Source: Podarcis filfolensis
Lineage: Eukaryota
Reading direction: 5' to 3' (one strand)
DNA length: 64,000 nt
Assembly (NCBI GenBank): GCA_964270895.1
Contig: OZ185437.1
The notes under the pieces are model-generated. The model searched no databases. It saw only the letters and a program-made list of their open reading frames with translations, and was not told the DNA's origin. The translations under genes and the position numbers were made by a program. Positions 25,992 through 60,672 of this stretch are shown here, one piece after another (position 1 is the first letter of the stretch; each line of letters starts with the position of its first letter).

Positions 25992-28659
25992 TGTGTGAAG
26001 CAGTGCTATTGATTCTGGCTTTCCTGGGTTGTAGATAATTTTTTTTTTAAGGAACAAAGGGCAAGAGTGAGGATGATACAGCTGGCTTAGGAACACTAAC
26101 AGCCCAGGCTAGTTCTAGAAAAAACAACAACATGTAACTCTCTTCTGCTGTTAGCAAAGGACATATCCATAAGATTCTTATTATAATATGTGAAATTAAT
26201 GGGGCTTACACTAAAGGTGCAGATCTCATCTCTTAGTGCACTAATGACAGCCTTCTCTAAAATGGTTTTTAGAATATAAATTCCACTTAGAATGCATTGT
26301 AGTAATAACACTCCATGTCCTGCATAGTACTAATGATACCAAGTACTTATCTCAAATAAAGTACTTGATAGCAAGAACAAATCCTCCTCTTAGCGATAGA
26401 GTTAATTAGTATTTCTAGCCACCACCATAAACTGCGAATGTAGTTAATGGAGCAAGGAACATCTTTAGGATGTTGAGTACACAGCCACGAAATGTGTTCC
26501 ACATCTCACTAAATACAACGAATTAATATGCAGTCACCCAGAAGGCGGCATGATTTAAATCGAGTCTCCTCATTCATCTATTTTCCAAACAAGCATGCAA
26601 ATTGACTGGTTGCTATAAACAATTAAAGTATGTCAATTTGCAATTACACTAGGCCTTTATACTACCTAGGAACATATTCCAAAACTTTATAATCTCCCTG
26701 ACAATGCAGTATGGGCAAGCAGCTAAGAAAGAAGGGTGAAACCAGATTTTATGAATAGGCATAATGTTAATTGCCTTTGGAGTTCCCAGTTATGGGTGTT
26801 TATTGTTTATTGAAACCAAGGAAAAGTAACCTGGCCAACAACCTTGTTTAAACATGATTTGTTTGGTCACATCATTGCACAAACTCACCAAGCTACAGAA
26901 GTACAAGGCAAGACCAGCTAGAAAACAAAACAAGTTCTGGAGGAACAAACTGTTGCTTGTTTGCTTATCTGTGATATGACAACTCATGGTTGACTGAATA
27001 AACTATGGCTAAAGCAAGCCTTGGCTTATAATTATCTGAAAAACAGCAAATGTTTTCAGACAGAAGTGATTTTAAGAGACTGTCATTATAGCCTTTGTAT
27101 TATGTTCAAATGTAGTGTCACACTTTTAAAGGGGCCCCTTAAAACTTTTATATGGTTTTTCAATTTAAAAATATTAATATAAATAAAGAAACAAAGTCAT
27201 TTTAAGTGGTGAAAATAAAGTTTCAAGAACTAGATCAATAAAATCAGTTGACTGTCAAAAGACTAAGCAAGGTGTCAACAGAAGCCTCTATATGGAAGAC
27301 ATTTCAGAGACTGGGCAGATGTTCTCTTGCATTCCAACATACTGAACTTCACACACTGGGTGAGAGGAATAATGAACAGGACCTCAGCTTCTGAACAGAA
27401 TGCCAGAGTAGGTTCAGAGCACCAAAGAATGTGGCCTGTAAGGTTTCTGGAGCCAGACCATTTCAGCTTTAAAAGGTTAAGACCAGCTTTTGAATTTGAG
27501 CCCAGAGACAAACTGGTAGCTTGTGCAGCTCAATCACTGATGGTGATGACTAAAAAATAATAATAGATTATTATCCACTGTTTTTCATGTTGGAAATCCC
27601 ATCCACTCTCTTTAATTTGGCTCTGTTTCAATTTTACTCTCATTGGCTTCTCCACTTGCACTCCTCTGTCATAGCCCAGCACTACTCAAGGAGAGATAAT
27701 GTCAAGACAAGAAAATGCAAGCTGGGTGGCCATACTTCATAAAAATGCTGCCTAAAATGACAAACAAAACATCACTGCCTTGCTAACTTTTCACCCCAAA
27801 TGTACACCAGGAATCTGAGCAAAACCATTGAAGATTAACCCTTTGAATACTTGTGAGAACCATGTAACTTACCGATAATGTAAATATTAATAATAACTCA
27901 CAAAGAGCAGCTGAATACAATTTCCCTATATCCAGGCTCAGTTAGCTACTGACTAGAACTGAAAGTTGTGCTGTCCCTATCTTGACTAGCATAGAGGCAC
28001 CAACTTATATTAACCCCCACAATAATTCTCTTTGGACTTTCACATATGACTAGGCCACTTGCATATTTTCTGTTTTATGAAAGTACACATCACCTGGGCA
28101 TGTGTAGGGAGAAAACACCATAGAGGAAAAATTAAATCAGGGAAGTAGGTTCAGGGGTTAGTCCTCATCTGCAGGTGCAGTATTGTAAACAACAACAGCA
28201 ACATCAATCTATAAATTAAACAATGCTAAGCAAGAGACCTTTGGTATGAAGGAAGACAGTCTCAAGGTACTCCTTCTGCTGAGCTATATTTAAAGTTCCC
28301 CCCACCCCCGGATATTAAAATAGCTTTTCTGTGAAAAAACACAAGCTTCAGCAGAAGAAAAAGCATATATATTTTTTACTCTTTTTATCTCTTACTCTGC
28401 CATATCATACACCTGTTTCAATGAGGCTGGGGATTAGCCAGCATATTGCTTTTCTTCAGAGGATACACACTGGTGTGTGCAGTAAAATATTTGAATTGAT
28501 CATGCTCCAAAGCTCTCTTATTAGTAAATCCTCAAAAAGTAAACAAGAATGGAAAACCAACAGCATTCCGGCACCCCTAACTGAACTGCCATGAGTTTTC
28601 TTAAGGCAATCTTCTAAAGGGCTGCAAAAGCCTACAGAAGCACAGGAATGATTATTGAA

Positions 28660-29720
28660 CAACGAAAGAGAGTCCACCACCTTCCGAAGGAGTCCGTTCC
28701 ACTGTCAAACAGCTCTTACTGTCAGAAAGTTCTTCCTTATGTAGTTGGAATCTCATTTCTTGTAACTTGAAGCCATTGGTTTGGATCCTAGCCTCCGGAG
28801 AAGGAGAAAACAAGCTAGCTCCATCCTCCACATCCTGTCACACTACACTTTATTTGAAGATGACTATCATATCTCCTCTCAGTCTCCTCTTATCCAGGCT
28901 AAACATATCCAACTCCTTCAACTGCTCCTCCTAAGGCTTGCTTTCCAGACCCTTGATCATCTTGGTTGCCCTCCTCAACACACATTCCAGCTTGTCCATA
29001 TCCTTCCTAAATCGTGGTGCCCAGAACTGGACACAGTACTCCAGGTGTGGTCTGACAAATACTAGAATACCGTGGTTCCATTGATCAGGACATTATCCTT
29101 CTATTAAGGATAGCAGCCTAGAATAGCATTAGCTTTTTTCGCTGCTGCATCACACTGTTGGCTCATGTTAAACCTGTGGCCTACAAGACCCCTAAATCCT
29201 TTTCTCACATGTACTACTGGCAAGCTGGTTCTTCCTGCCTAAATGCAGAGCCTTACATTTGTTCCTTTTGAAATTCATTTTGCTAGTTTGGACCAGCTTT
29301 CCAATCTGTTATGGTCATATTGAATCCCAGTTCTGCCTTCTGTGGCATTAGCTACCCCTCCCAGTTTGGTGTCATCCAAGTTGTTTATAAAGACATTGAA
29401 CAACAACAGATCCAGGACAGAACCCTGAAGCACCCCACTTGTCACTTTTTTCCAGGATGATGAGGAACCATTCGTGAGCACTCTTTGGGTTCAATGAGTC
29501 AATCAGCTATGAATCTAGCCCACATTTTACCAGCTTCTCCACAAGAATGTCATGGAGGACTTTGTCAAAAGCCTTACTGAAATTAAGACATACTACGTCC
29601 ACGGCATTCCCCTGATACACCAAGCTTGTAACGATCAAAAAAAGAAATGAGATTCATCTGGCACGACTTATTTTTGAGAAATCCATGCTGGGTCTTTGTA
29701 ATCACAGCACCCTGTTCTAA
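28660..29720 (-). mobile_element. CR1 LINE ORF2 (reverse transcriptase) fragment, decayed
   Basis: NGSSSSWKKVTSGVLQGSVL..LLFNVFINNLDDTKLGG, with the FADD region deleted; further YCVQFWAP-like and frameshifted segments. Confidence 0.9.
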
Positions 29721-30517
29721 CAGACCGACTGTTTAATTATCTGGGAGGTCAACTAACAGAGGTCATGCTGCTGTGCAGTTGAAGGTAAAGCAATCTCATT
29801 TATATGCAAGAGTCTTAATGATTAATCTCAAGGATAGGGATGCCACAATAATGTTTTTAAGTGTTCGATCCCTTGATTACATTTCTGTGTAATGACTTAG
29901 CAGCATACTTCCTAGGCCTTTAAAATGTGGTCCACATGTATTCTTACATAAATGTTTACAGCAATTCTGTAAGGCAAGCCAATGTTACTCCACATTACAG
30001 ATGGGAGCTGAGAGATAGGCTTTCCTGTGGTCATCCAGGGAACAGAGATTTAACTCGAATTCTTGACCAGTACACTAGCTCTCTGGCTTCTGGTAATTTA
30101 TCACCTTATCTTTAGTCGTATTATGGCAGCCCTAAACTTGTCTCTTGTCTAGAGACAAAAGGTAACCCAGTGAAAGTGATGTCATGGACTAGGTCAAAGC
30201 ATGGATTCAGTACTTAAGAATTTCCTCTCCCAGATGCATTACTCACACTCTCAGCTTCTGGGATCAATCTGCACCTCTGGAAGGGAGAAGAAATATGCAG
30301 TCTTTTCATTGCTTATCTCTTAATTAAATGTGGCCTTAAAAATGAAGTCCTCTTCTGGGAACAAAAAGCGGATTGACATCTGTCAAAATAGTTGCTGTTT
30401 TCAGGAGGCATATGCTGATGTTTAAAATATGAGTAACGCCATTAGGTTGCATGCTAAATGAACAGAAGTTATTTTTGCTATTGTTAAACCAACCACCAAG
30501 CTAAATATAATTTAGGA

Positions 30518-32208
30518 GACTTCCGGGTTGGCGCCATCGCCGAATGGCGGACTCCCTCCGAGCTCCGGAGGGAGCCGGCTCGGCAGGGGCTGGGTTTTAC
30601 CGCACCGGCGATGCGGAGACCCTTAGAAACCACGGCCACGGGGGCCGTGGACTTGGAGACTCGGCTAGCACCGCTAGCGCCCTCCCGACTCGTGAAGGAG
30701 CCTTTTTAAAGGCTACGGATCGGGTGCCGGGGAGAAGCGTGGTGCTTTGAGTCCTCTGCCATCCCTGCCGAGCGAAGCCGCATGCCATCCGGCGGAGAGC
30801 GCTGACTTCTTCCATTGAGAATTTGGACTTTTAACAACAACCCGTGAGTAAATTGGAAATCGGGTTTAAAAGAAGAAAAATTTTTTGGATTTGAGACGAG
30901 CGGGGGGGGATCTAAAAAGGAAGTCAGTCCCCCTCCCTATTGTAGACATTTTAAAACAAGGATTGGGAAGCCAAGGCCCAAAAAGAACGGTATCTTTGCT
31001 AAAATCAAGAATTCCATGATGGGGAAGTACAAGAATTGTGCTGGAGGAAGAATTGAAGGAGAAGGAAAATGCACCCCCCTCCCTGGGAACCGGGGCGATT
31101 GAGGAGTGAGCCTGGTGAAAAGAGCCGGTGATTTTGACAGCTGTCAAAGTAGCTGTCAAAGTCGGAATTTTAAAGAGGATTTTATTACAAGGACCTTGCT
31201 GGTCAAATTTGTTACAACTTGATATAATTTGTTAAGACTTGAATACAAAATGGCGAAAATACGGAGAACAATCGGATTTTTGGAAACAAAGCTACAACAA
31301 CCCCCCTAGAGGAGCTTCGGGACATTACAAAGATGGGCGTAAGCCGGGAAAAATACAATACTTCGGAATTTCACAGAACTGGTTATCTCCTGGGAAAGCT
31401 GCAAAACTGAAACTGAATCTCGTCTACAGGGTGTTTAGACTAAAAGGAGACAACAGAATACTTTACTGAAGAAGGAAGGGACTGAACGCAAGTTTTTGTT
31501 CCTGAATAACAACAACCCATGTAGAGTTACTAAACTTCTGAATAAGAAAGTTTTAGCAGCGGAACAAGAGGAAGCTGGACTATAACCTTGAAAGAACAAT
31601 GGGGGGAATTTTATAATTTGACATTTTTAAAGATTTAGGAATTAATTTTTAAAAAGTAATCCTAAAAATGGGAAATAATTCTGCAAGGAGTTGGGGGAAA
31701 AATGGGATTGATGGACTTAAGATTTCCAGGCTGGAAACATAGATTGGAGGATAAGGGAAATTAAACCGGGGAAGGGGAGGGAGAATTAGAATCCAAAGGC
31801 TTGCAACTATTTTCTGAATTGGTTTTCTCTTTTCTAATATATTTCTTATTTTTTTATACTTTTATTCTGTGTGCTTTTACTTTAATGGGAAAAAAGGGGG
31901 ACATTGTGGAAAGAAAAGGGGGTGGGCTATGGGGAGAGATCTTTTGCTTTTTTTTATCAAGGGTGTTGCATAAGGTTTGTATAAATTTAAATTTGAACAA
32001 TGGGGTATATAAATTGTGCTTTAAATCAGAAACAGAACTTGTGGAAACAACAATATGAAAGGGGAATACGGTAGGGGTGGGGGAAGGGGGGAGTCCCAGA
32101 AAGTAGATGTTTGAAAATAAGGTTCTGAATGTATCTTCATAATTTCTTTTCTTCTCTTTCTGTATTTTGGAAACTTCAATAAATATTATTTAAAAAAAAA
32201 AAAAAAAA
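30518..32208 (+). mobile_element. Non-LTR retroelement, L1-like and non-autonomous (1691 bp)
   Basis: Perfect 16-bp TSD TAAATATAATTTAGGA (30502-30517 and 32209-32224); CpG-rich 5' end starting GACTTCCGGGTTGGCGCCAT; AATAAA at 32178-32183; A17 tail at 32192-32208; no ORF over 100 aa. The L1 assignment is inferred from this architecture. Confidence 0.8.
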
Positions 32209-32230
32209 TAAATATAATTTAGGAACTTAC

Positions 32231-32272
32231 TTGTGTAAGATCAGGAATGTCTCCTTTATCAAGTCCAATTTG
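32231..32272 (-). CDS. SNAP91: Exon 9 (42 nt)
   Basis: QIGLDKGDIPDLTQ; ccacag| ... CAA|gtaagt. Confidence 0.95.
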
Positions 32273-33022
32273 CTGTGGATAATGAAAAAATAATAATTCA
32301 GAAATGTTCTTTTGTTTATGCTTAACAAGTCCAGAAATACTAAATAGGTCAAATTGACTACTGCATCTGAACTGTGATTTTAACTCACTTTGAAGCTCCA
32401 TTTGTAATATCCACATCCAGGTGCTTTAAAATTAATGCATATTTGTAGAAATATGCAATACATTCATTGCCCTACAGAACTGCAACTCTGGATGGAGAAC
32501 TTCTCTCAAACACAGATGGATGCAGCAAAACGTTTGTGCACAGAGCTGGTCCCAGGCTGTGTCCTTCTGACCCGCTCTACGCATAAAAATGAATACCTGA
32601 AATTGAAGAACTCATATCTATTTAAAGATGGGTTTTCCCTAACTTGGGATATAAAAATTGCTGTTCTGTCAGAAAGATAATGATGCAGCAGCTATTCCCA
32701 CCAGCAGGCTGCTGGTCTACTACTATCATCTTAACTGGTATAACATGAATATACTGTAGAATGCCAAAGCAGAGACTAATGATATTTTATTTGCATTTTG
32801 GTGACATCCTGAACAGCTAACACTTTCCACAAAATTAAATAAATGTCAAAGAAATTTTACACAATGTAGTTTATTTATGGACGTGGCGTTTGATCTAAAC
32901 ACATACAAAGAGAGTATCTGAACAACAACTCAGTTTGCTATCAAGTAGATAATTGTGGGGGAAATCACATGCCTAGATAGCAACCATGACAACCAACATG
33001 CCACAGTGGAAGATTCACTTAC

Positions 33023-33129
33023 CTCTGCAACTTTGAGGAATTCTGATACTCTTGTCATTCTAGTCAGAAACCGCTTGTAAATCTCAAGAGCATCTTTGCA
33101 CTGTCCCTTCTTCATTTCAAAGAATTTCT
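33023..33129 (-). CDS. SNAP91: Exon 8 (107 nt), ANTH
   Basis: (E)[35 protein letters not shown]; ttccag| ... GAG|gtaagt. Confidence 0.97.
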
Positions 33130-33732
33130 CTGGAATAAATGACATATTCATTTTTAATCCACAAAACTTTTACATTATTCATACCAAGTCTTCATCTGCA
33201 GATTATTGCACAAGCAGAAAAGCACTTCTGCATATGCTCAGCAGCCCTGCTCAATTCCTTGGCTTTCCCTGTCCTGCTGCAGACTTCCCATGCCCAATCT
33301 CTCACTGTTCCTGAACTCCATGCGGCGCTGGCTGCAGAAGGCTGCACTATGAGACCAGCAGCCATGACTAACTGCTGCTTTGGATCCAAGTTTGCTGAAG
33401 CTATGAGAGGGGCAATGAGAGAAACACTTGGGGTTTCCAAGTGAAAATATGTGTTGATAAACCATATTTCTTAAAGACACTAGCCTCTGCTGTTCCTTGA
33501 TCTTCCCAAAGGAAACAATGCTGGGTATGTGCCTGGAACCCCTGGAATCTTGCAACGCTTTTGGAATTTGGGGTGGCATGGAACAATATAGAAAAGAACA
33601 CAGCTGAATGTGAGAGAATCATGCGCTTGGAAAATAAGATGGCTTCTTCCTCTCTTAACAAGATTAAGCTGCAGAACTACTATTCTCTTGGAGCAATGTA
33701 ACGTTAAAAACATGCTACATCAAATTACTTAC

Positions 33733-40189: not shown

Positions 40190-43100
40190 CTATTTTGGGA
40201 AAGGGAGAATGATAACTGTAAATACAGAAACTTTCAGTTTTGTTATTGTTAAAGACCATGCCATTGCAGTTTAGTGATGTAACAGTCACTCAATTTCGCT
40301 ACTATACTTGGACTTTATTTAGAGCAACCTCCTAAATAATTGTTTGCCTTTCACACATGATTGTCACAAGGGGATGTGCAAACATACCATAAAACAGCTA
40401 AAAATATTTTCTAAAACAGTAGATGGGTTTAAAAACAAATACAAAATTAAATGTAAGGCAAAGCCCTTTTAATCCAGCTAGGAAAGCTTGTCAAAACAAA
40501 AATATATTTGTTACCCCAGATCAATCACTACAGAAACAATTAAGATAGGAAACCAACTTTCTTCTGGACTGCCTACTACTACTAGCCTGAAGCTATAAAT
40601 GGGAGTGGTTATTTACAAGCATGATCTGTGCCTAAAAGAGGAATAACCCCATCCACAATTCAAATCATGTTGAAGTATAATAACTGAAACTTAAAAGACG
40701 CAAATTGCCTTCTAGGCACTTCAAAAGGCTCCCTCCTTTTTCTTCTATTTGCTGTGGATCTTTCCTTTTATTTGCCATTTCAGGGTTCTGAAATCTGTGT
40801 TTGCCAGAGATGTGTTCCTTAACCATTCCCCCTATTATCCCTTCCACCAGTCACTTCCACTCACTTGTCCAGCAAGTCTCTCCTCATTCCTAATTTGTGA
40901 GAAGAACAAGATCAAATATCACTTCCTTTGCCATTGCCTCCATTGACCTGCTTTTGAAAGATGGGTCTCAGCTGACTTACCTGTGGTATGAAGTCAGTGG
41001 TCATAAAGCACAATTATTTACAGTTATCCCCCCCTTCACTTACAGCTAACTTCCCTCCTTGCACTACATTACTATGAAGGTGAAGAAGATGGGAATTCAT
41101 CCCAGAATTAAGCGTTTATATTTCTAGCTCCGCAAGTTTGGGAAAGAAGAGGAAAAAAGTGACATGATTTTGAAGCTAGACTAAAATTAAAATGAAGTCA
41201 AAATCCTTCCATTTGCTACATTTCAGGCAGATTTACCCATGCACTGGGCACTGTAAAATTTGCCAAATTTAGCATCCAATGCATAAATAGTTTCACTATT
41301 ATTAGCCAAATAAACCAATGGGCACAAAGCCAGTCTATCCATCATGCTCCAAGTGCTGTTTTCTGCAGCTATACCTGCAGAATATACCCCAGAAAACACA
41401 ACAATTGTATTATTATCATCATTTATTAGTCACTTTTCTTTACAAAACATAAACCAAAGCAATCCAGACCAACTCCTCCCACATAATGATCTAGAAATGT
41501 CAAACAGAAATGCCAGGGGAAAGGATTACCCCCATGACAGTCTCTCCAAGTTATTAAGGGCAGTGAACTTTGTTCTGCTAATGTTGCAAGAGTCCCTATC
41601 CCTACCCTGACCAAAGAGAATCATGTTTTGACTCAGGAAACTAACAATGTAATAGCCAAGAGGCACTGGCAGATGAGCAGGAACTGCAGCTCAGATAGAG
41701 ATACGCCACGGTTCTGTCCTCACAACACATTGCTCGTCTCGCTTTTCATTGACAGATCCCAAAACAGGATTCAGTCATTAATTAAACTTCCAGGGATGGT
41801 TGCTGAGCTACTTTTGAGCAATCTTGCATTCAAAAGATCTCTTTTCTTTTTAATTTTTTCTTTTTTATTGTTTGTAAAAAATGGAAAATGCTAATAAATA
41901 TCTTATAAAAAAAACCCAAAAGATCTCCATGCCCAGTTTGAGAAATGCTGCAGCAATTATTTATTTAAGTCTCAATTTCTGGGACTAACGTGACATCTTT
42001 TTTTCACCTACAGAAGTAGGCATAGATACGTACGCAAGAGAATGGAGAGGGGGCAGGCTGAAAGGATGTTGGTGAAAGAAATTCAGCTCCATATTTGAAC
42101 AAGGCACATGAATGTAAATTGTCACTGTTCTCTTCATTTATACTTCTTCCCTAGCAGAGCAAACGAGAAGCAGCATGGGAATTTTCAAGCCTCTAGCAGC
42201 AGCCAGCACATCAAATGCTGAAGCATAGCTTTGTGTGACCTCAGCTGACCTCAACAAAGTGCCACTCACTATTCTCTTTCTCTCTTACGCTTTTTCTGTA
42301 TTTTGCTCTGTGGTGGTAAGCTTAAGTGTACTTCTCCATTTCTACCAGTGCTCAGAGATTAGGGGTCACAGTTCTTGTTGCTGTTGTTGTTTCTAGTCTA
42401 ACCTACTTTGCATCCCTCTGGCTTAGTGACAGAAGTTTCTTCCTCAGGCACACCTACTCCCAAAAAAGCTTAACTTGTTTTCAGCCTCCCAGAGTCAGAC
42501 ATACACAAATTAAGACACAAATTAGAATTTCTTTAATTTGGCACTAGTCCAAAACAGAAATACTCAAAGCAGCTTACAACAAGCCAATGAAAACAAAACA
42601 ATAATATTGCTCAAGGAATACAAACAAGTTCACAACTGTGACCCTTCAAATGTAAGGGTGCAAAAATGTAACAATATACCGTAATGGAAGCATTACAGAC
42701 ATCCCTCTAATTCAGAGAGGATTGGCTAGTACCTTCTTTATGGTCTTTCTGGGACCTTTTCCTTCTCCCATGCCAAAGGGGGGGGGGGGTAAATGATCTT
42801 ACCGTTTTGAACCACTGATTGTGCTGGTTATTTTTTAATCACCTTGGTTTAGTCATCTCTCTAATTTTTAAGCTGGCAGTTTATTTTCTGATATTTCTGT
42901 TTTATTATTTATTTTAATTGTATTTTATCATTTCATTTGTGTGTGATGCCCAAAGCAAATGTTATTTGGCAACCCTTCTATAAATATAGTAAATTTTAAA
43001 ATTAAGTAGATGAGCCAACAGGGGTGTGATTGTTCACTAGGCTACTTGTAAAAGAAAAGGAAGTTGCCACACAGCAGATTTAAATGATATAGAAGTATAC

Positions 43101-54510: not shown

Positions 54511-56745
54511 ATCTACTTCACAATAGTCAACTCCACAATAACTCAGAGCAGGGCTTTCAATGTGGCTGCCCCCTGTTCTGTCAAACCGCATTCCTGTCAA
54601 TATGCAACAGACACCCTCTATCTGCACTTTCCAGGAAAAAAAGTCATTTTTTGTTCTGACAAGCTTTCCCAGCTGGATGAATGGGTCTCTGCTTTGTATT
54701 GTTTTTAATTTCATCTTCTGCCATTTTCTATGCTGTTTTAGCCATTTTTATCATATTTTCTACATAGCCTTGTGACATTTGTGGAAGACAGATAACCATA
54801 ATAATAAAATTATTATTATAATAATTAATAATAATAATAACAATATACTTATATGAGCCCTAACAAATGAATACCAATCACATAACAAGCATGGCACAAG
54901 TTTTATGTTATTCTGCCCGAAGAATCAAAACACACACAGGTACCACTATCCAAACATTTGTTATTGAAACATTCACATGAGGAATTAGTACCCAAACCTC
55001 ATTATACACACCACAGATTCAGATATCCAAACAGCCAGACTTATGTGTAGTACTGTAAACAAATAAGCAACCTTATGTTTTGCTGGTTTGCAGCAGGTGT
55101 TTCACCAGAAACCATGGTGGGAAGTGGGAGAGATCAGACAAATCTTTTTTCAGAGGGTTGTCCTGGGTTTCCCAGTTTTGTTTTTGTTTTTTGTTTTGTT
55201 TGTCGTTTTGGGGTCAGAATTTCATGGTCGGAATGCATGATAAAATTCCCCCATAGGAATCAATGGAAATCATCTTCTCATTAAAAGAACGCTCACCTAA
55301 CAAACAATTCCTGGAGAATGCATTGTGTTCAGATAGTGAGACCTGCTTGGATACAAATGTACATCTGGAAAACTTTGTGTACAGTGCTCTCTTTCTATCA
55401 CAGCTCATTACTTAAAGGAAGGGCCTGCACAGACAGCTATGCAAAATCAACAATAAAGAAGAAAGTGCAGAGTCATAACACTTATCCATCTCAGCAACAG
55501 AATATTTTGCCCTGAGAAGCTTGTGCTCTACAGATCCTACCTCCTTCAGCCCTATAGAGTGTGGCAAGTGTGAATGGAAGGGGACACATTTAACCATGAC
55601 ATTGTCCCTCTTAAAAGAGTTATCTGCAGTCTGCCACCAGCTGCCAAGGCATCTGAACTCCTGACCCTGTACTAGAACTTGTGGCTGCAGGTGTGTGTGC
55701 TTGCTTGTCCTCCTAACCCAGCCTTCATTAACCTGGTGCCCCCCAAATGTCTTGGACCACAGCTCCCATCAGTCCCAGCCAGCAGTTACAGAATGCACCT
55801 GTGCAATGTGCACAGGAAGATGTAACAGGGCCCTGTGATGTCATCATGGTATCCCTTCCATTCACATATATTGTTGGTGCCTTCTCTGTGTGGGTTCTAT
55901 GGCAGTACTGATGAGCAACTTCATTACGGATGGGTGATGGGAGGAGTTCCTAGAGATGTTGTGTGCAGGTTGATGTCTGTGGACCTTCTCATTTCTACTG
56001 GTGTTGTTTAGGTTTCTATTTTGCTGTGTTGAGTACAGAAGATCAGAACTACTCTGTCCTTTGCTGCTCGCAGTATTTAGGATTACAAACTGTAATATGA
56101 GGGCCATAAAGTAGGATTAGATGGCCCAACCATGGTCTAGCCATTTTGACTACCACTCCCTGCAATATAGAATGAAGGCCAAATGAGTGCAGAATGAAGA
56201 TCTAACACAATTAAGGATGGCTGCACAAAATAACACAACTAAGAGCAGTACAGAGATTTCATTTGGGATGAGTGGTGCATGTGACATACTTTAAAATTTT
56301 CATCTTTCCTACCCTTCATTAACGATACACAATGGAACCATTACAATGAACAAGAATCATTCAGTTTTGCCACGATCAAACCAACCTCTCTGTAGAGATA
56401 ATCTCCACATTACAGCAACTCAAGTCAACATCCACCCTCATCTAAACACATTCGCCCAAAGCATGGCCAGAATACTTTTGCAGTTTCCAAGTAGTCACAG
56501 GCCTTTTCTCTCTGATACATGCACCTGTCCTAAAACCTGAAGGTCAAAATGAAGCAAAATACGGGGACTAAATAATTTCTGAGGTGTTATATTGCTACAA
56601 TAAAAAGTTCGTTTTTTAAGCACTTCATTTAATTCTAATGGCAGAAGAAACTGATTACCCAGAGTGCAATGGACCCCAGGAGCACAGAACCACACAGATT
56701 CCCTAGCCCTCCACACGCGAACCACTTATATAAAAAGATGCTTAC

Positions 56746-56875
56746 AGTCCAGGTGTTTTTTCTTGGGCCCCATCACTTCATGTGTGGTTGCTTTGCAGAC
56801 GGCTCTAGCTACAGCTGATCCTGTAACGCTGTACTGAGCAGCTGCGATGCGATCTGTCAGCGTCTGACCCGACAT
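56746..56875 (-). CDS. SNAP91: Exon 2 coding part (130 nt), ANTH N-terminus with PIP2-binding K28 and K38-K39-K40-H41; exon includes 30 nt of 5'UTR up to 56905
   Basis: [43 protein letters not shown]; acceptor ttgtag| at 56906-56907; donor GACT|gtaagc. Confidence 0.97.
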
Positions 56876-58394
56876 CTTCGGCTAATTCTAGGACTGCTAC
56901 CACTTCTACAAGGGGGAGGGGGGAAGAAAAATAACTGAGGGGAGGATAATCTTTTTTAAAAGGATATATATATGTGGACAATTATTTAACTAGCGAAAGC
57001 TGATTTCTAAATCCTGGCTCATTCCAGGTTCCCTCCTTCCTCCCATGCCACCTCCTCTGTTGTGTAAGTGTTTGCATTGCAACTATATCCGAGAGATTCT
57101 GGGGGCATTGTAGACGAAACAGAAATATGCCCACATAATAATACTGTATATGAATTCCGAGGGTGTGTGTGTGGGGGGGGGTGTCCTTTCCCTTGCCTGC
57201 CTCCCTTGAGTATGATGGCGGTTCCTGCAAACCACTATGTATCTCATCTCTCGTTTATGGGGGGTGGGGAATAAATGAAGCTTTCTCCCTCCCCTCCCCG
57301 CAACCTCACAGAAGATCTCCCATCCCTGGGCCTTCCTGACAGAGCCCCAAGAGGGCCCAGGGACTGAATTATCTAGCCAGTCTCCACACGGCCCTGTCAC
57401 CACCGCTCCCTCCTGCTGCTGGCGGGGCTTCTTACTGCAGCAACGGGATTCTCTCGCCTTCCTCCCTGCGTTTCTACCTCTCTCTCTCTCTCTCTGGTGG
57501 GAGATTATCATATCATTGCGCCATGTTATGCCCTCTCGGTGCCTTTCCCCCAGCCAGCTCTGTCTTGAAGACAACTGCAGGCCGCCGGTTCCCAATCCCA
57601 AACCACCCCACCCCGGCGATCTCTCACGCCCCGCAGCCCCCCGCTCCCCCTCCTCTCCCCCCCTACCCTCTCCAAGCCGCTTGTCTCCTTCTCCTCGCCC
57701 TCTGCAATGCAACCCTCCCCTTTTTCCGGGGGGGGGGGGGAGAGGAACGACAGCAGAGGCGGCGGCGGCGGCGTTTGGCTAGTAGTCTTGCATATCTGCA
57801 TCTCTCCCTCCCTCCCGCCCCCCCCACCTCGCCTCGGGGATTACCAAGCAGCGCCCAGCCAGGCCTGCTCTCCCCGTCCCCTCCCCGGAGAATGTGGAAG
57901 TGCCCGAGGCGGCAGCGGCGGCAGCAGCAGCAGACCTGTCAGTGCGTCCGCGTCCTTCTGGCGACTGCCGCGCCTCTGCTCTGCCCCTCGCGGTGCTGCT
58001 GGCGCTGCCTCCTGCTCGCGAGGAGGCCACGGTCTCTCCTCCTCCTCCTCCGCTTGTCCCCCCCCCTCCACCCAACACGCTAACCTCTCTCGCCCCCGCC
58101 CGCTCGCAGCTGCGCCGAGCCCCCCTCCGTCCGCACCGGCGGCCCCCTTTGCTCCAGAGCGCGGGAAAGGCGCGCCCTGGGCGCACACGCCGCGCCCTCA
58201 GGTGCAGGGAGAGCAGGGATGCGCTAAGGCCGGAGCGGGTGCCGGGGGAGCTCTCCACGCCCGCCGCCGCCACCGCTATTTCGAGCCTAATCCCCGGTTG
58301 CCTAATCCCCGGTTGCGGCCACAAACCTTCCCTGTGGTGCCACTGCTAGGATGCATGTATGCGTGCAATACGCAACCCCCGACGCGCGCTCTCT

Positions 58395-58395
58395 C

Positions 58396-58433
<38 letters not shown>

Positions 58434-58439
58434 ACACAC
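58395..58439. repeat. (GT)n(GC)n(AC)n alternating purine-pyrimidine tract
   Basis: 45 nt of alternation; perfect 26-bp palindrome at 58414-58439. Confidence 0.95.
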
Positions 58440-58549
58440 CTCGCTCCCTCCTTGCCTTTTCTTGCCGGCTCTTCTTGCTCGTTCCTCACGGGGCCTCGCA
58501 GGTTTGTGGCTTCTTCGGAGTCAGGTGACTCGGAGCAGACGAAGCGGAC

Positions 58550-58568
58550 AGCCCTCTAGGGGGCCGTA
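58550..58568 (+). promoter_or_regulatory. Candidate CTCF site
   Basis: AGCCCTCTAGGGGGCCGTA; core CCTCTAGGGGGC fits CC[AT]C[CT]AG[AG][GT]GGC. Confidence 0.5.
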
Positions 58569-60672
58569 AGAACCGGATAAGGCCTCCCCCCCCAACACCC
58601 CCCCCCGCGCTCTTAAAAGGGACACCCCTCGCGGGCCGCGCGGTGGGAATCTCCCCGCCTTGGAAAAAACCGCGCGCCCAGTCGTGGGAAGGGCAGCTGC
58701 TGACTGTTGAGAAACCGGGGTGGCGGCGCCCCTCTTCCTTCCCCACCACCAGCCCAATAGTTTTACTATATACGTACATCGGTATACACCTGTATTTTTG
58801 TTTGGGGGTACCTTTCACTTCAAATATGTGAAAATATAGCAAGATCTCTCCCCTTTGGACTGTATTATTTCTAATTAAGTTAGCATATTATCAAACCATT
58901 TTGTAAAGAGCCAAAGGAACACAAGTGAACAGCAAAGAACCTGCACAAGCAACGCTGACACCAAACCCTACATATAGTAAGTAAAATAGAAACATCGCCA
59001 CCCAACCCCAACCCCCCCATCTCCCCCCCCCACCTCTTTCCCCCTTTTCTTCCTAATGTCTCAACAAATGAAACCGATTTGTAAAAAAATTACATGGGGG
59101 AAATACAAGAGAGACATTGCACACACTTTTGTAAATCAAGAAAATCTTTAATAAAATAAAAATAAAGAGCTAATATCTGATTTGCCTGACTCTACCAGGC
59201 TCCTTCACATTTCATCTTCTTTGTTGCCGTAAACATTATTAGCTGTGTAACCAAATGGATGAACAATTAACATAAAGCTGCAGTCCTAAGTATGCTCATT
59301 GAGCTCAATGGGAATCGCTTCAGACTGGGTAAAGGTGCTTAGAATGGCACTGCAGGTATGTTCATAAATAGTTCTCATATAAAACAGCTTCAAATTATAA
59401 CTTCCAGTGCAACTATAAATGCTTTCTAGCCACTTAAGATGTACTTCAAATTGTATTATAATAATGACAGAGTTCCTCATTATTTTCAAACGTCTTTGCT
59501 TTTGTAATCACCTGCAATTGTAGTTAAACTCAGAAAACTGCCGTATTTTAAGAACTCAGAAACTGAAATTGCACTATCATGATGCTATATTTCATCTTTC
59601 CCCGTAATGACAAATTGAGCAGCAATAAGAGCTCGTAAGTCATGAGTGAAGCGGTGCTGCAGAAGGGGGGCATGTTGGAAAGATGTGGATGCATCTCATT
59701 AGTCACGTTATTAGATAGACCTGAGTCAGTCTGGTACCAGTTGCAGTGGTTTATATTTGCTTACTTTTTCCTGGATAGGCCCCCTAATGTTGATTGAAAA
59801 TCCCAAAACAATTTTGCTCTTGAATAGTCACTTTGAATTTAATCCAGTGATGGTATCCTTCAGCTCTAGAGTTCTTGGTTTCAGGATGTACAGCTTGCTT
59901 ATAAGATAACAGTACATGTTGAATTATTTTACAGTTGCAGTGGCCTCTTAATTTTACAAACTAGCAAAATACCAGTCCTTATAAAGAGCAGGAGCCGGGG
60001 TGTGAGGTGAAGTCATATTGCAAGGAGAAATCCTATTCCGCTGAGAAGTGCAAAGCTAGAACATGAGGCTGTTCTTCTAGTGCTGGGATGGAAAAGGCAG
60101 GCTTCCCCACCACCACCAGCTGGTTAGGTCTGGTTTATTAAATTTCTACATCACTCCACGCTATAAAAAGTCTTGAAGCCATTTGCACCTAGGAGTAAGA
60201 GCACAATTAATAGAAATACATATGAATTGTTCTGAGTTTGCGGGGCAGGAAGTAGGTTATATGTGAGACATTTCTAACTCCTGGATCCAGCAAGTGTTAA
60301 GGCAGGCTAGGTTCCTGTGTTGAGGTGATAGCTTTGGTGATGGGCCATTAAGGGCAGGGAAAGGGAAGGGGGCTCTGTGAGAGATGGGCAAATGGTGGTG
60401 CTCCTTCTTCAACTCATATATGGTTAGAAGGACAAAGCCTGAGTTAGGAGTTGGAAGTTGCAGTAATGTGGGCCAGAAGAGAAATGGCAAGCTGGAGAGA
60501 GTGTCAGAACAATGTTTGATTTCTGTTTGAATCCAAAGCTGTGGCTATGGGAGAAACAAGACCATATATAAATAAACCATATATCATAAAACCACCACAG
60601 TCTCTACTGTGGCTCATTTCCAAAATGAAGCACAAAGTGCCTGGAACCCCTGGAATCTCACACCGCTTAGAG

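What the first reader, a model, noticed from the sequence alone, without database searches (positions are those of the whole stretch)
30502..32230. Full-length 1.69-kb L1-like element with no long ORF, inserted against the exon 9 splice donor
It has both ends (CpG-rich promoter-like 5' region, AATAAA and A17), a perfect 16-bp TSD and no ORF over 100 aa. Both ends intact at this length fits a non-autonomous L1 derivative (HAL1/SINE-like), not ordinary 5' truncation. Retained CpGs and a clean tail suggest it is young. The right TSD starts at intron position +7, so the GTAAGT donor (32225-32230) survived exactly, and the pre-mRNA now has a U17 tract at +23. This may be an uncatalogued active squamate family.
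Basis: partly seen in the sequence, partly recalled or inferred. Interest (0 to 1): 0.7.

Follow-up and report, generated by a model that had tools for sequence, protein, structure and literature searches.

The report
Young non-coding lizard retroposon, high-copy family
This is a real, recently inserted 1.7-kb jumping element with no gene of its own. It belongs to a family present in roughly a thousand copies in wall-lizard genomes and most likely spreads by borrowing the L1 copying machinery. Descent from L1 itself is not shown.

Summary
A 1,691-bp insert (30518-32208, + strand) has a perfect 16-bp target-site duplication, AATAAA, a pure A17 tail and a CpG-rich head. It has no ORF over 100 aa and no Pfam or Rfam match. 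It lies antisense in an intron of an AP180/PICALM-family gene, 6 nt from an untouched GTAAGT donor.

It is not a single-copy retrocopy. In public lizard runs the flanks sit at single-copy depth (about 85 and 7), while the element reaches 38,000-344,000 and 200-62,000. Six coded organisms hold its words. One run assembles it as even-depth contigs with 6 differences in 1,583 bp. Two Logan contigs that carry its small ORFs are 1,745 and 1,674 bp long.

So it is a young member (about 0.4% from the family majority) of a discrete ~1.7-kb, non-coding, polyadenylated family. L1-type machinery most likely moves it in trans.

It fails the HAL1 and SINE tests. This scan has already noted sister families (1.1-kb non-coding, about 2-kb ORF1-only) elsewhere in this genome. 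Interest is moderate.

The parts
30502..30517 (.). left target-site duplication (16 bp)
   Evidence: Identical to 32209-32224; these are the only two occurrences in the window.
30518..32208 (+). 1,691-bp non-coding polyadenylated retroposon, one copy of a high-copy lacertid family
   Evidence: Depth is hundreds- to thousands-fold above the flanks in X2 and X5. X1 contigs at even depth cover 30598-32180 with 6 differences. Words are held by six coded organisms.
30518..30900 (+). CpG-rich head, putative internal Pol II promoter
   Evidence: 34 CpG, o/e 1.05, GC 58%. It is the most abundant segment in X2 and X5. Its function is inferred.
30519..30526 (-). ETS-type motif CCGGAAGT at element bases 2-9
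   Evidence: Exact match. There are 3 in the window against 0.4 expected. This is a motif match only.
30532..30549 (.). two facing YY1-type cores (CGCCAT ... ATGGCG) at element bases 15-32
   Evidence: Motif match only. The analogy to the YY1 site of the human L1 promoter is from my own knowledge.
32178..32183 (+). AATAAA polyadenylation signal, starting 14 nt before the tail
   Evidence: Read directly from the sequence.
32192..32208 (+). pure A17 tail
   Evidence: Read directly from the sequence.
32209..32224 (.). right target-site duplication; intron positions +7 to +22 of the host gene
32225..32230 (-). intact GTAAGT splice donor of the host gene
   Evidence: Reverse complement read.
32231..32272 (-). 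42-nt coding exon (QIGLDKGDIPDLTQ) of an AP180/PICALM-family gene
   Evidence: Aligns to CALM residues 256-269. Other exons of the same gene lie at 56875, 40070, 39217 and 33760.

Best explanation
The insert is one young copy of a discrete ~1.7-kb, non-coding, non-autonomous retroposon family of lacertid (wall) lizards. Shown: it is a retroposed unit with a 16-bp TSD, poly(A) signal and A17 tail, it is multi-copy in several species, it has no detectable coding capacity, and this copy lies about 0.4% from the family majority. Inferred mechanism: RNA polymerase II transcribes a master copy from an internal CpG-island promoter in the first ~380 bp, where ETS and YY1-type motifs sit within 32 bases of the first base. 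The promoter is therefore carried along with every new copy. The RNA is polyadenylated at its own AATAAA. The reverse transcriptase/endonuclease of an autonomous L1-type LINE then captures it in trans. That enzyme nicks an AT-rich target (bottom strand TATATTTA/G) and copies the RNA in by target-primed reverse transcription, which creates the TSD. This copy landed antisense in an intron of an AP180/PICALM-family gene. The duplicated target restores intron positions +7 to +22, so the donor context is unchanged as far as +22. The origin of the family is left open: an L1 derivative that lost its ORFs, or a captured host transcript.
For: Anatomy. Multi-copy status: flank depth is about 80-96 in X2 and 5-8 in X5, whereas the element bins reach 38,000-344,000 in X2 and 200-61,700 in X5. 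Six coded organisms in nine studies hold its 31-mers, with shares from 0.86 to 0.07. Discrete unit: X1 contigs of 221, 150 and 1,299 bp tile 30598-32180 at near-equal depth (61, 52, 47) with only 6 differences. Logan contigs that carry the head ORF (99% identical) and the tail ORF (98%) are 1,745 and 1,674 bp long. Non-coding: no Pfam family for any piece, no PDB L1 ORF1p match and no Atlas hit. Not Pol III: no tRNA or Rfam head, and T-runs lie inside the element. Youth: the 5 differences within 30909-32180 are letters private to this copy, and the family majority in X1, X2, X5 and X14 agrees against it (table 3). None of them is a CpG change. Flank divergence between organisms B and C is 61/1,988 = 3.1% (table 8). 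Squamates have many young L1 families available as drivers (PMC3787681).
Against: The tool warns that summed contig depth is not a copy number. The target TTTA/G differs from the canonical L1 TTTT/A at two positions. Expression is not shown: in the presumed RNA run X14 the element's RNA/DNA depth ratio (about 0.003-0.06) equals that of the neighbouring dead CR1 fragment (about 0.02-0.05), which fits passive transcription. The promoter motifs are consensus matches only.
Confidence: 0.8

Rival explanations
1. L1 derivative in the strict sense. The family arose from an autonomous lizard L1 by loss of both ORFs and still carries that L1's 5' UTR/promoter and 3' UTR. This would give it privileged access to the L1 machinery. 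It is a narrower version of the best explanation.
For: The depth profile in X2 is U-shaped: head about 3,400-4,000x the flank depth, middle about 750-1,400x, tail about 2,450-2,800x. This suggests the head and tail are shared with other, more numerous elements. The sense strand of the body is A-rich and C-poor (A 35-39% over 30818-31717), like lizard L1 at about 43% A (PMC9099904). Earlier scan notes report ORF2-less L1 offshoots of about 2 kb in this genome (unchecked by me).
Against: No L1 ORF1 or ORF2 relic was detected. No L1 sequence from this genome was available for comparison. The tail excess can equally come from 5'-truncated copies of the same family, and the head excess from sister non-autonomous families.
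Confidence: 0.35
2. Coding-dead or deleted copy of the ORF1-only 'half-L1-like' family of about 1.9-2.1 kb that this scan reported elsewhere in the same genome.
For: Same genome, similar architecture and size class, same L1-type insertion marks.
Against: No coiled-coil or ORF1-like piece in any frame. The near-identical X1 consensus is colinear with this copy over 1,583 bp, so the ORF-less state belongs to the family and is not a private decay of this copy. A word search of the scan's index with this sequence gave nothing, although a blank there means little.
Confidence: 0.12
3. Ordinary processed pseudogene: a one-off retrocopy of a cellular mRNA or lncRNA.
For: The 5' end looks like a housekeeping-gene start (ETS site, CpG island). 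The insert has a poly(A) signal, tail and TSD.
Against: Depth is hundreds- to thousands-fold above the single-copy flanks in two DNA runs of two organisms, and thousands of distinct contigs were laid. There is no protein homology.
Confidence: 0.03

Closest known systems
HAL1 (half-L1) of mammals
   Same: A non-autonomous, poly(A)-tailed unit of 1-2 kb that lacks ORF2 and depends on L1. HAL1 arose repeatedly from L1 (PMC5753468).
   Different: HAL1 is defined by encoding ORF1p. This element has no ORF over 100 aa and no ORF1-like sequence. Its L1 ancestry is unproven.
SVA of hominids
   Same: A non-coding, roughly 2-kb element that is transcribed by Pol II and polyadenylated at its own AATAAA. 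It is trans-mobilised by L1 and shows L1-type TSDs (PMC3287187, title and abstract).
   Different: SVA is a composite of Alu-like, VNTR and SINE-R parts. This element has no internal tandem or composite structure and carries a CpG-island head with ETS/YY1 motifs.
Sadhu elements of Arabidopsis (from my own knowledge, not checked here)
   Same: A family of roughly 1-kb non-coding, poly(A)-tailed, TSD-flanked retroposons with no ORFs, presumed to depend on LINEs.
   Different: A plant family of low copy number with no sequence relation.
1.1-1.2-kb non-coding and ~2-kb ORF1-only L1-type retroposons noted by this scan in the same genome
   Same: Same host genome, same insertion marks, a promoter-like head with a YY1 box, no reverse transcriptase.
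   Different: A different length (1.69 kb). No shared words were found, although a blank there is uninformative. The relationship is untested.

Membership tests
L1-type (TPRT) retroposed insertion | 3' poly(A) tail directly abutting the target-site duplication | tested here: met
   A17 at 32192-32208 is followed directly by the TSD at 32209.
L1-type (TPRT) retroposed insertion | Target-site duplication of about 7-20 bp | tested here: met
   A perfect 16-bp TSD, present only twice in the window.
L1-type (TPRT) retroposed insertion | Nick at a TTTT/A-like site | tested here: inconclusive
   The bottom strand reads TATATTTA/G. It is AT-rich but differs from the consensus at two positions. The site preference of lizard L1 endonuclease is not known to me.
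Interspersed repeat family (not a single retrocopy) | Many dispersed copies in the genome | tested here: met
   Element depth is 38,000-344,000 against flanks of about 85 in X2, and 200-61,700 against about 7 in X5. This gives an order of magnitude only.
HAL1 / half-L1 | Encodes ORF1p and no ORF2p | tested here: not met
   No ORF over 100 aa. No Transposase_22 or other Pfam hit on any piece. No PDB ORF1p match.
HAL1 / L1 derivative | 5' and/or 3' ends homologous to an autonomous L1 of the same genome | not testable with these tools
   The window holds no L1.
SINE | Pol III head derived from tRNA, 7SL or 5S, and length under about 600 bp | tested here: not met
   ARAGORN found 0 genes. Rfam gave only a sub-threshold chance hit. 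The unit is 1,691 bp long and has internal T-runs.
Autonomous L1 | ORF2 with endonuclease and reverse transcriptase | tested here: not met
   No such ORF or Pfam hit.
Processed pseudogene of a protein-coding gene | Homology to a cellular protein, and low copy number | tested here: not met
   The only protein relatives are two near-identical ORFs on ~1.7-kb Logan contigs. The depth is high-copy.

The most novel reading that the evidence does not exclude
The family is not an L1 remnant. It is a host-derived (or de novo) Pol II transcription unit whose portable ETS/YY1 CpG-island promoter lets it out-copy its L1 driver. It reaches about 10^3 copies in wall lizards, whereas anole L1 families stay at very low copy number. 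It thereby seeds unmethylated CpG-island promoters and YY1 sites across lacertid genomes, including antisense promoters inside genes.
Probability: 0.25. Interest if true: 0.6.

Novelty: new member of a known kind. Interest (0 to 1): 0.4.

Why it matters
Squamate genomes carry many young L1 lineages at low copy number. How non-coding RNAs compete for the L1 machinery outside mammals is hardly described. A discrete, ORF-less, ~1.7-kb family with its own CpG-island head, at about a thousand copies and with very young members, would be a reptile counterpart of SVA or HAL1-type parasites. It would also give presence/absence markers for Podarcis phylogeny and a source of portable promoters.

Locally the insertion matters little. 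The splice donor and its context up to +22 are unchanged. The only open point is whether a U17 tract at +23 affects use of a 42-nt exon of a neuronal clathrin-adaptor gene. U-rich tracts downstream of donors can act as splicing enhancers through TIA-1 (my own knowledge).

Tried and rejected
- **Single-copy retrocopy:** rejected by depth.
- **SINE or small-RNA origin:** rejected.
- **ORF1 relic:** by eye, frame 3 (31243-31407) looked faintly like the L1 ORF1p RRM (NNRIFG..LEELRDI..EFHRTG). Pfam at E<=10, phmmer against the PDB and the ESM Atlas all gave nothing, so I treat it as pareidolia.
- **Other copies or L1 fragments in the window:** none. The only weak blastn hit (41850-41921) is AT-rich low complexity. 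No L1 ORF of 110 aa or more is present.
- **Internal repeats, LTRs or TIRs:** none.
- **Exact-word scan of JGI metagenomes with a 23-mer from the head:** 0 hits.
- **The scan's own index, searched by sequence:** blank.
- **Literature (five searches):** no description of such a lacertid family.
- **Empty site in another species:** One hint exists. The single-copy-depth X5 contig that starts at 32223 carries 78 unaligned letters to the left. That is more than a unique contig could extend into a high-copy repeat (about 44 letters, as seen in X2 with 39). It weakly suggests an empty site in organism C.

Full report
**Observation.** TAAATATAATTTAGGA occurs exactly twice in the window, at 30502-30517 and 32209-32224, and the match extends on neither side. 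The 1,691 bp between the copies (30518-32208) end in AATAAA (32178-32183), eight further bases and a pure A17 run (32192-32208). The first 383 bp hold 34 CpG (o/e 1.05, GC 58%). The rest of the element has o/e 0.42 and the whole window 0.25. The longest start-to-stop ORFs are 85 aa (+) and 97 aa (-). The longest stop-to-stop stretch is 121 aa on the minus strand. There are no terminal inverted or long direct repeats and no internal tandem structure.

**Host gene.** The element lies antisense in an intron of a minus-strand gene of the AP180/PICALM clathrin-adaptor family.
- An ANTH-domain exon lies near 40 kb (Pfam ANTH 1e-09; CALM structures 2e-20).
- The first coding exon ([26 protein letters not shown]...) lies at 56875, below a GC-rich island at 57.0-58.9 kb.
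- The 42-nt exon at 32231-32272 (QIGLDKGDIPDLTQ) aligns to CALM residues 256-269.
- The residues look like SNAP91/AP180 rather than PICALM. That call rests on my memory of the human sequences.

The donor GTAAGT (32230-32225 on the minus strand) is intact. The right TSD supplies intron positions +7 to +22 exactly as before the insertion, and the U17 run starts at +23. I did not count exons, so "exon 9" is unverified.

**What it is not.**
- No tRNA gene and no Rfam family. The one sub-threshold mir-77 hit scores 24.9 bits against a gathering score of 83 and is chance.
- No Pfam family for any ORF or any plus-strand stop-to-stop piece of 38 aa or more. This includes the L1 ORF1 and ORF2 families.
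- No L1 ORF1p among solved structures and no Atlas hit. A resemblance to the ORF1p RRM that I thought I saw by eye did not survive these tests.

**Copy number: the decisive result.** Six coded organisms in nine studies hold the element's 31-mers, with shares from 0.86 down to 0.07. I laid Logan contigs of four runs on 29000-33700.
- The unique flanks sit at flat single-copy depth: about 80-96 in X2 and 5-8 in X5.
- The element bins reach 38,000-344,000 in X2 and 200-61,700 in X5. That is hundreds- to thousands-fold above the flanks.
- The tool warns that summed contig depth is not a copy number, so I take only the order of magnitude: about 10^3 copies at 85% identity or better.
- X2 matches the window perfectly across both flanks (879 and 1,183 bp, no differences). 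One of its contigs crosses the left junction into the element, so the filled site is present in that sample. X2 may be the assembly's own species or individual.

**A discrete ~1.7-kb unit.** X1 shows no flank coverage and its contigs are very short, so it is probably low-coverage DNA. In X1 three contigs of 221, 150 and 1,299 bp tile 30598-32180. Their depths are nearly equal (61, 52, 47), and they differ from this copy at only 6 of 1,583 positions (table 8). Head, middle and tail are therefore colinear in the dominant copies, without the 3'-biased gradient of a truncating L1. Independently, the only database relatives of the head ORF (P0001, 99% identical) and the tail ORF (P0002, 98%) sit on Logan contigs of 1,745 and 1,674 bp.

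**Age.**
- At 31024, 31292, 31359, 31829 and 32105 the family majority in X1, X2, X5 and X14 agrees against this copy. These are private changes (table 3). All five are transitions and none is in a CpG.
- That puts the copy about 0.4% from its source.
- Flank divergence between organisms B (X2) and C (X5) is 61/1,988 = 3.1% (table 8). The insertion is therefore roughly a quarter as old as that split, if both evolve neutrally. It should then be absent at this site in organism C.
- The joints table was cut off, so I could not see an empty site. One single-copy X5 contig carries 78 unaligned letters left of 32223 and hints at one.
- Other positions (31372, 31845, 32033) split the X2 depth between two letters, which points to subfamilies.

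**Structure of the family.** The X2 profile is U-shaped. Relative to the flank depth, the head is about 3,400-4,000x, the middle (31198-31668) about 750-1,400x and the tail about 2,450-2,800x. In X5 the head is far more abundant than the 3' part. The simplest reading is that the head, and perhaps the tail, are shared with other elements. These could be sister non-autonomous families or an autonomous L1, and 5'-truncated copies would add to the tail. This fits L1 descent but does not demonstrate it.

**Expression.** X14 is only guessed to be RNA. Its depth on the element relative to DNA of the same organism (about 0.003-0.06) is no higher than on the adjacent dead CR1-type fragment (about 0.02-0.05). 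Own-promoter activity is therefore not shown.

**Mechanism (inferred).**
- The element starts with an exact ETS motif (CCGGAAGT on the minus strand, bases 2-9). The window has 3 such motifs against 0.4 expected.
- Two facing YY1-type cores lie at bases 15-32, inside a CpG island.
- By analogy with the human L1 5' UTR, where a YY1 site near +13 to +21 fixes the start site (my own knowledge), this is a plausible internal Pol II promoter that travels with each copy.
- The RNA would use its own AATAAA. ORF2p of one of the young L1 lineages typical of squamates (PMC3787681) would capture it through the poly(A) tail. Target-primed reverse transcription at an AT-rich site would then insert it, giving the 16-bp TSD.
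- The nick site TTTA/G is only an approximate L1 site.

**Comparison and novelty.**
- The element works like SVA or HAL1-type L1 parasites.
- It fails the defining HAL1 feature, which is an ORF1p gene (PMC5753468).
- It fails SINE criteria.
- It lacks the composite structure of SVA.
- Five literature searches found no description of such a lacertid family. Dfam and Repbase could not be searched, so "uncatalogued" stays open.
- This scan has already recorded several 1.1-1.2-kb non-coding L1-type retroposons and a ~2-kb ORF1-only L1 offshoot on other DNA of this genome. This is therefore one more member of a class already seen here. Its relation to those families is untested.

**Limits.** No lizard repeat library or genome search was available.

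Noticed in passing
window 28650-29720: Antisense fragment of a CR1-type LINE. The reverse complement encodes the conserved ...[11 protein letters not shown]... region of CR1-like reverse transcriptases; I recognised this from memory. It is very high-copy in all four runs, with depth up to 827,000 in X2.
   Followed up: partly
window 56745-56875 (minus strand) and 57000-58900: First coding exon of the host gene ([43 protein letters not shown]), just downstream of a GC-rich island (GC 0.54-0.69) that is probably its promoter. The residues look like SNAP91/AP180 rather than PICALM.
   Followed up: partly
window 31246-31255: A third YY1-type match (AAAATGGCG) lies inside the element body, about 730 bp from its start.
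   Followed up: no
window 32145-32208 (minus-strand reading): On the host pre-mRNA the U17 tract is followed within about 40 nt by AG dinucleotides (TTGAAG, ATACAG). This resembles a cryptic splice acceptor of the kind that antisense poly(A) retroposons supply. It lies only about 40-60 nt from the donor.
   Followed up: no
window 33396-33552: Another stretch of raised depth in all four runs (X2 10,694 against a flank depth of about 80), so another interspersed repeat. Not identified.
   Followed up: no
window 31372, 31845, 32033: At these positions the X2 depth is split between two letters (27%, 35% and 86% T). Organism A and this copy carry C, while organism C carries T. These are candidate subfamily-diagnostic sites.
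   Followed up: partly
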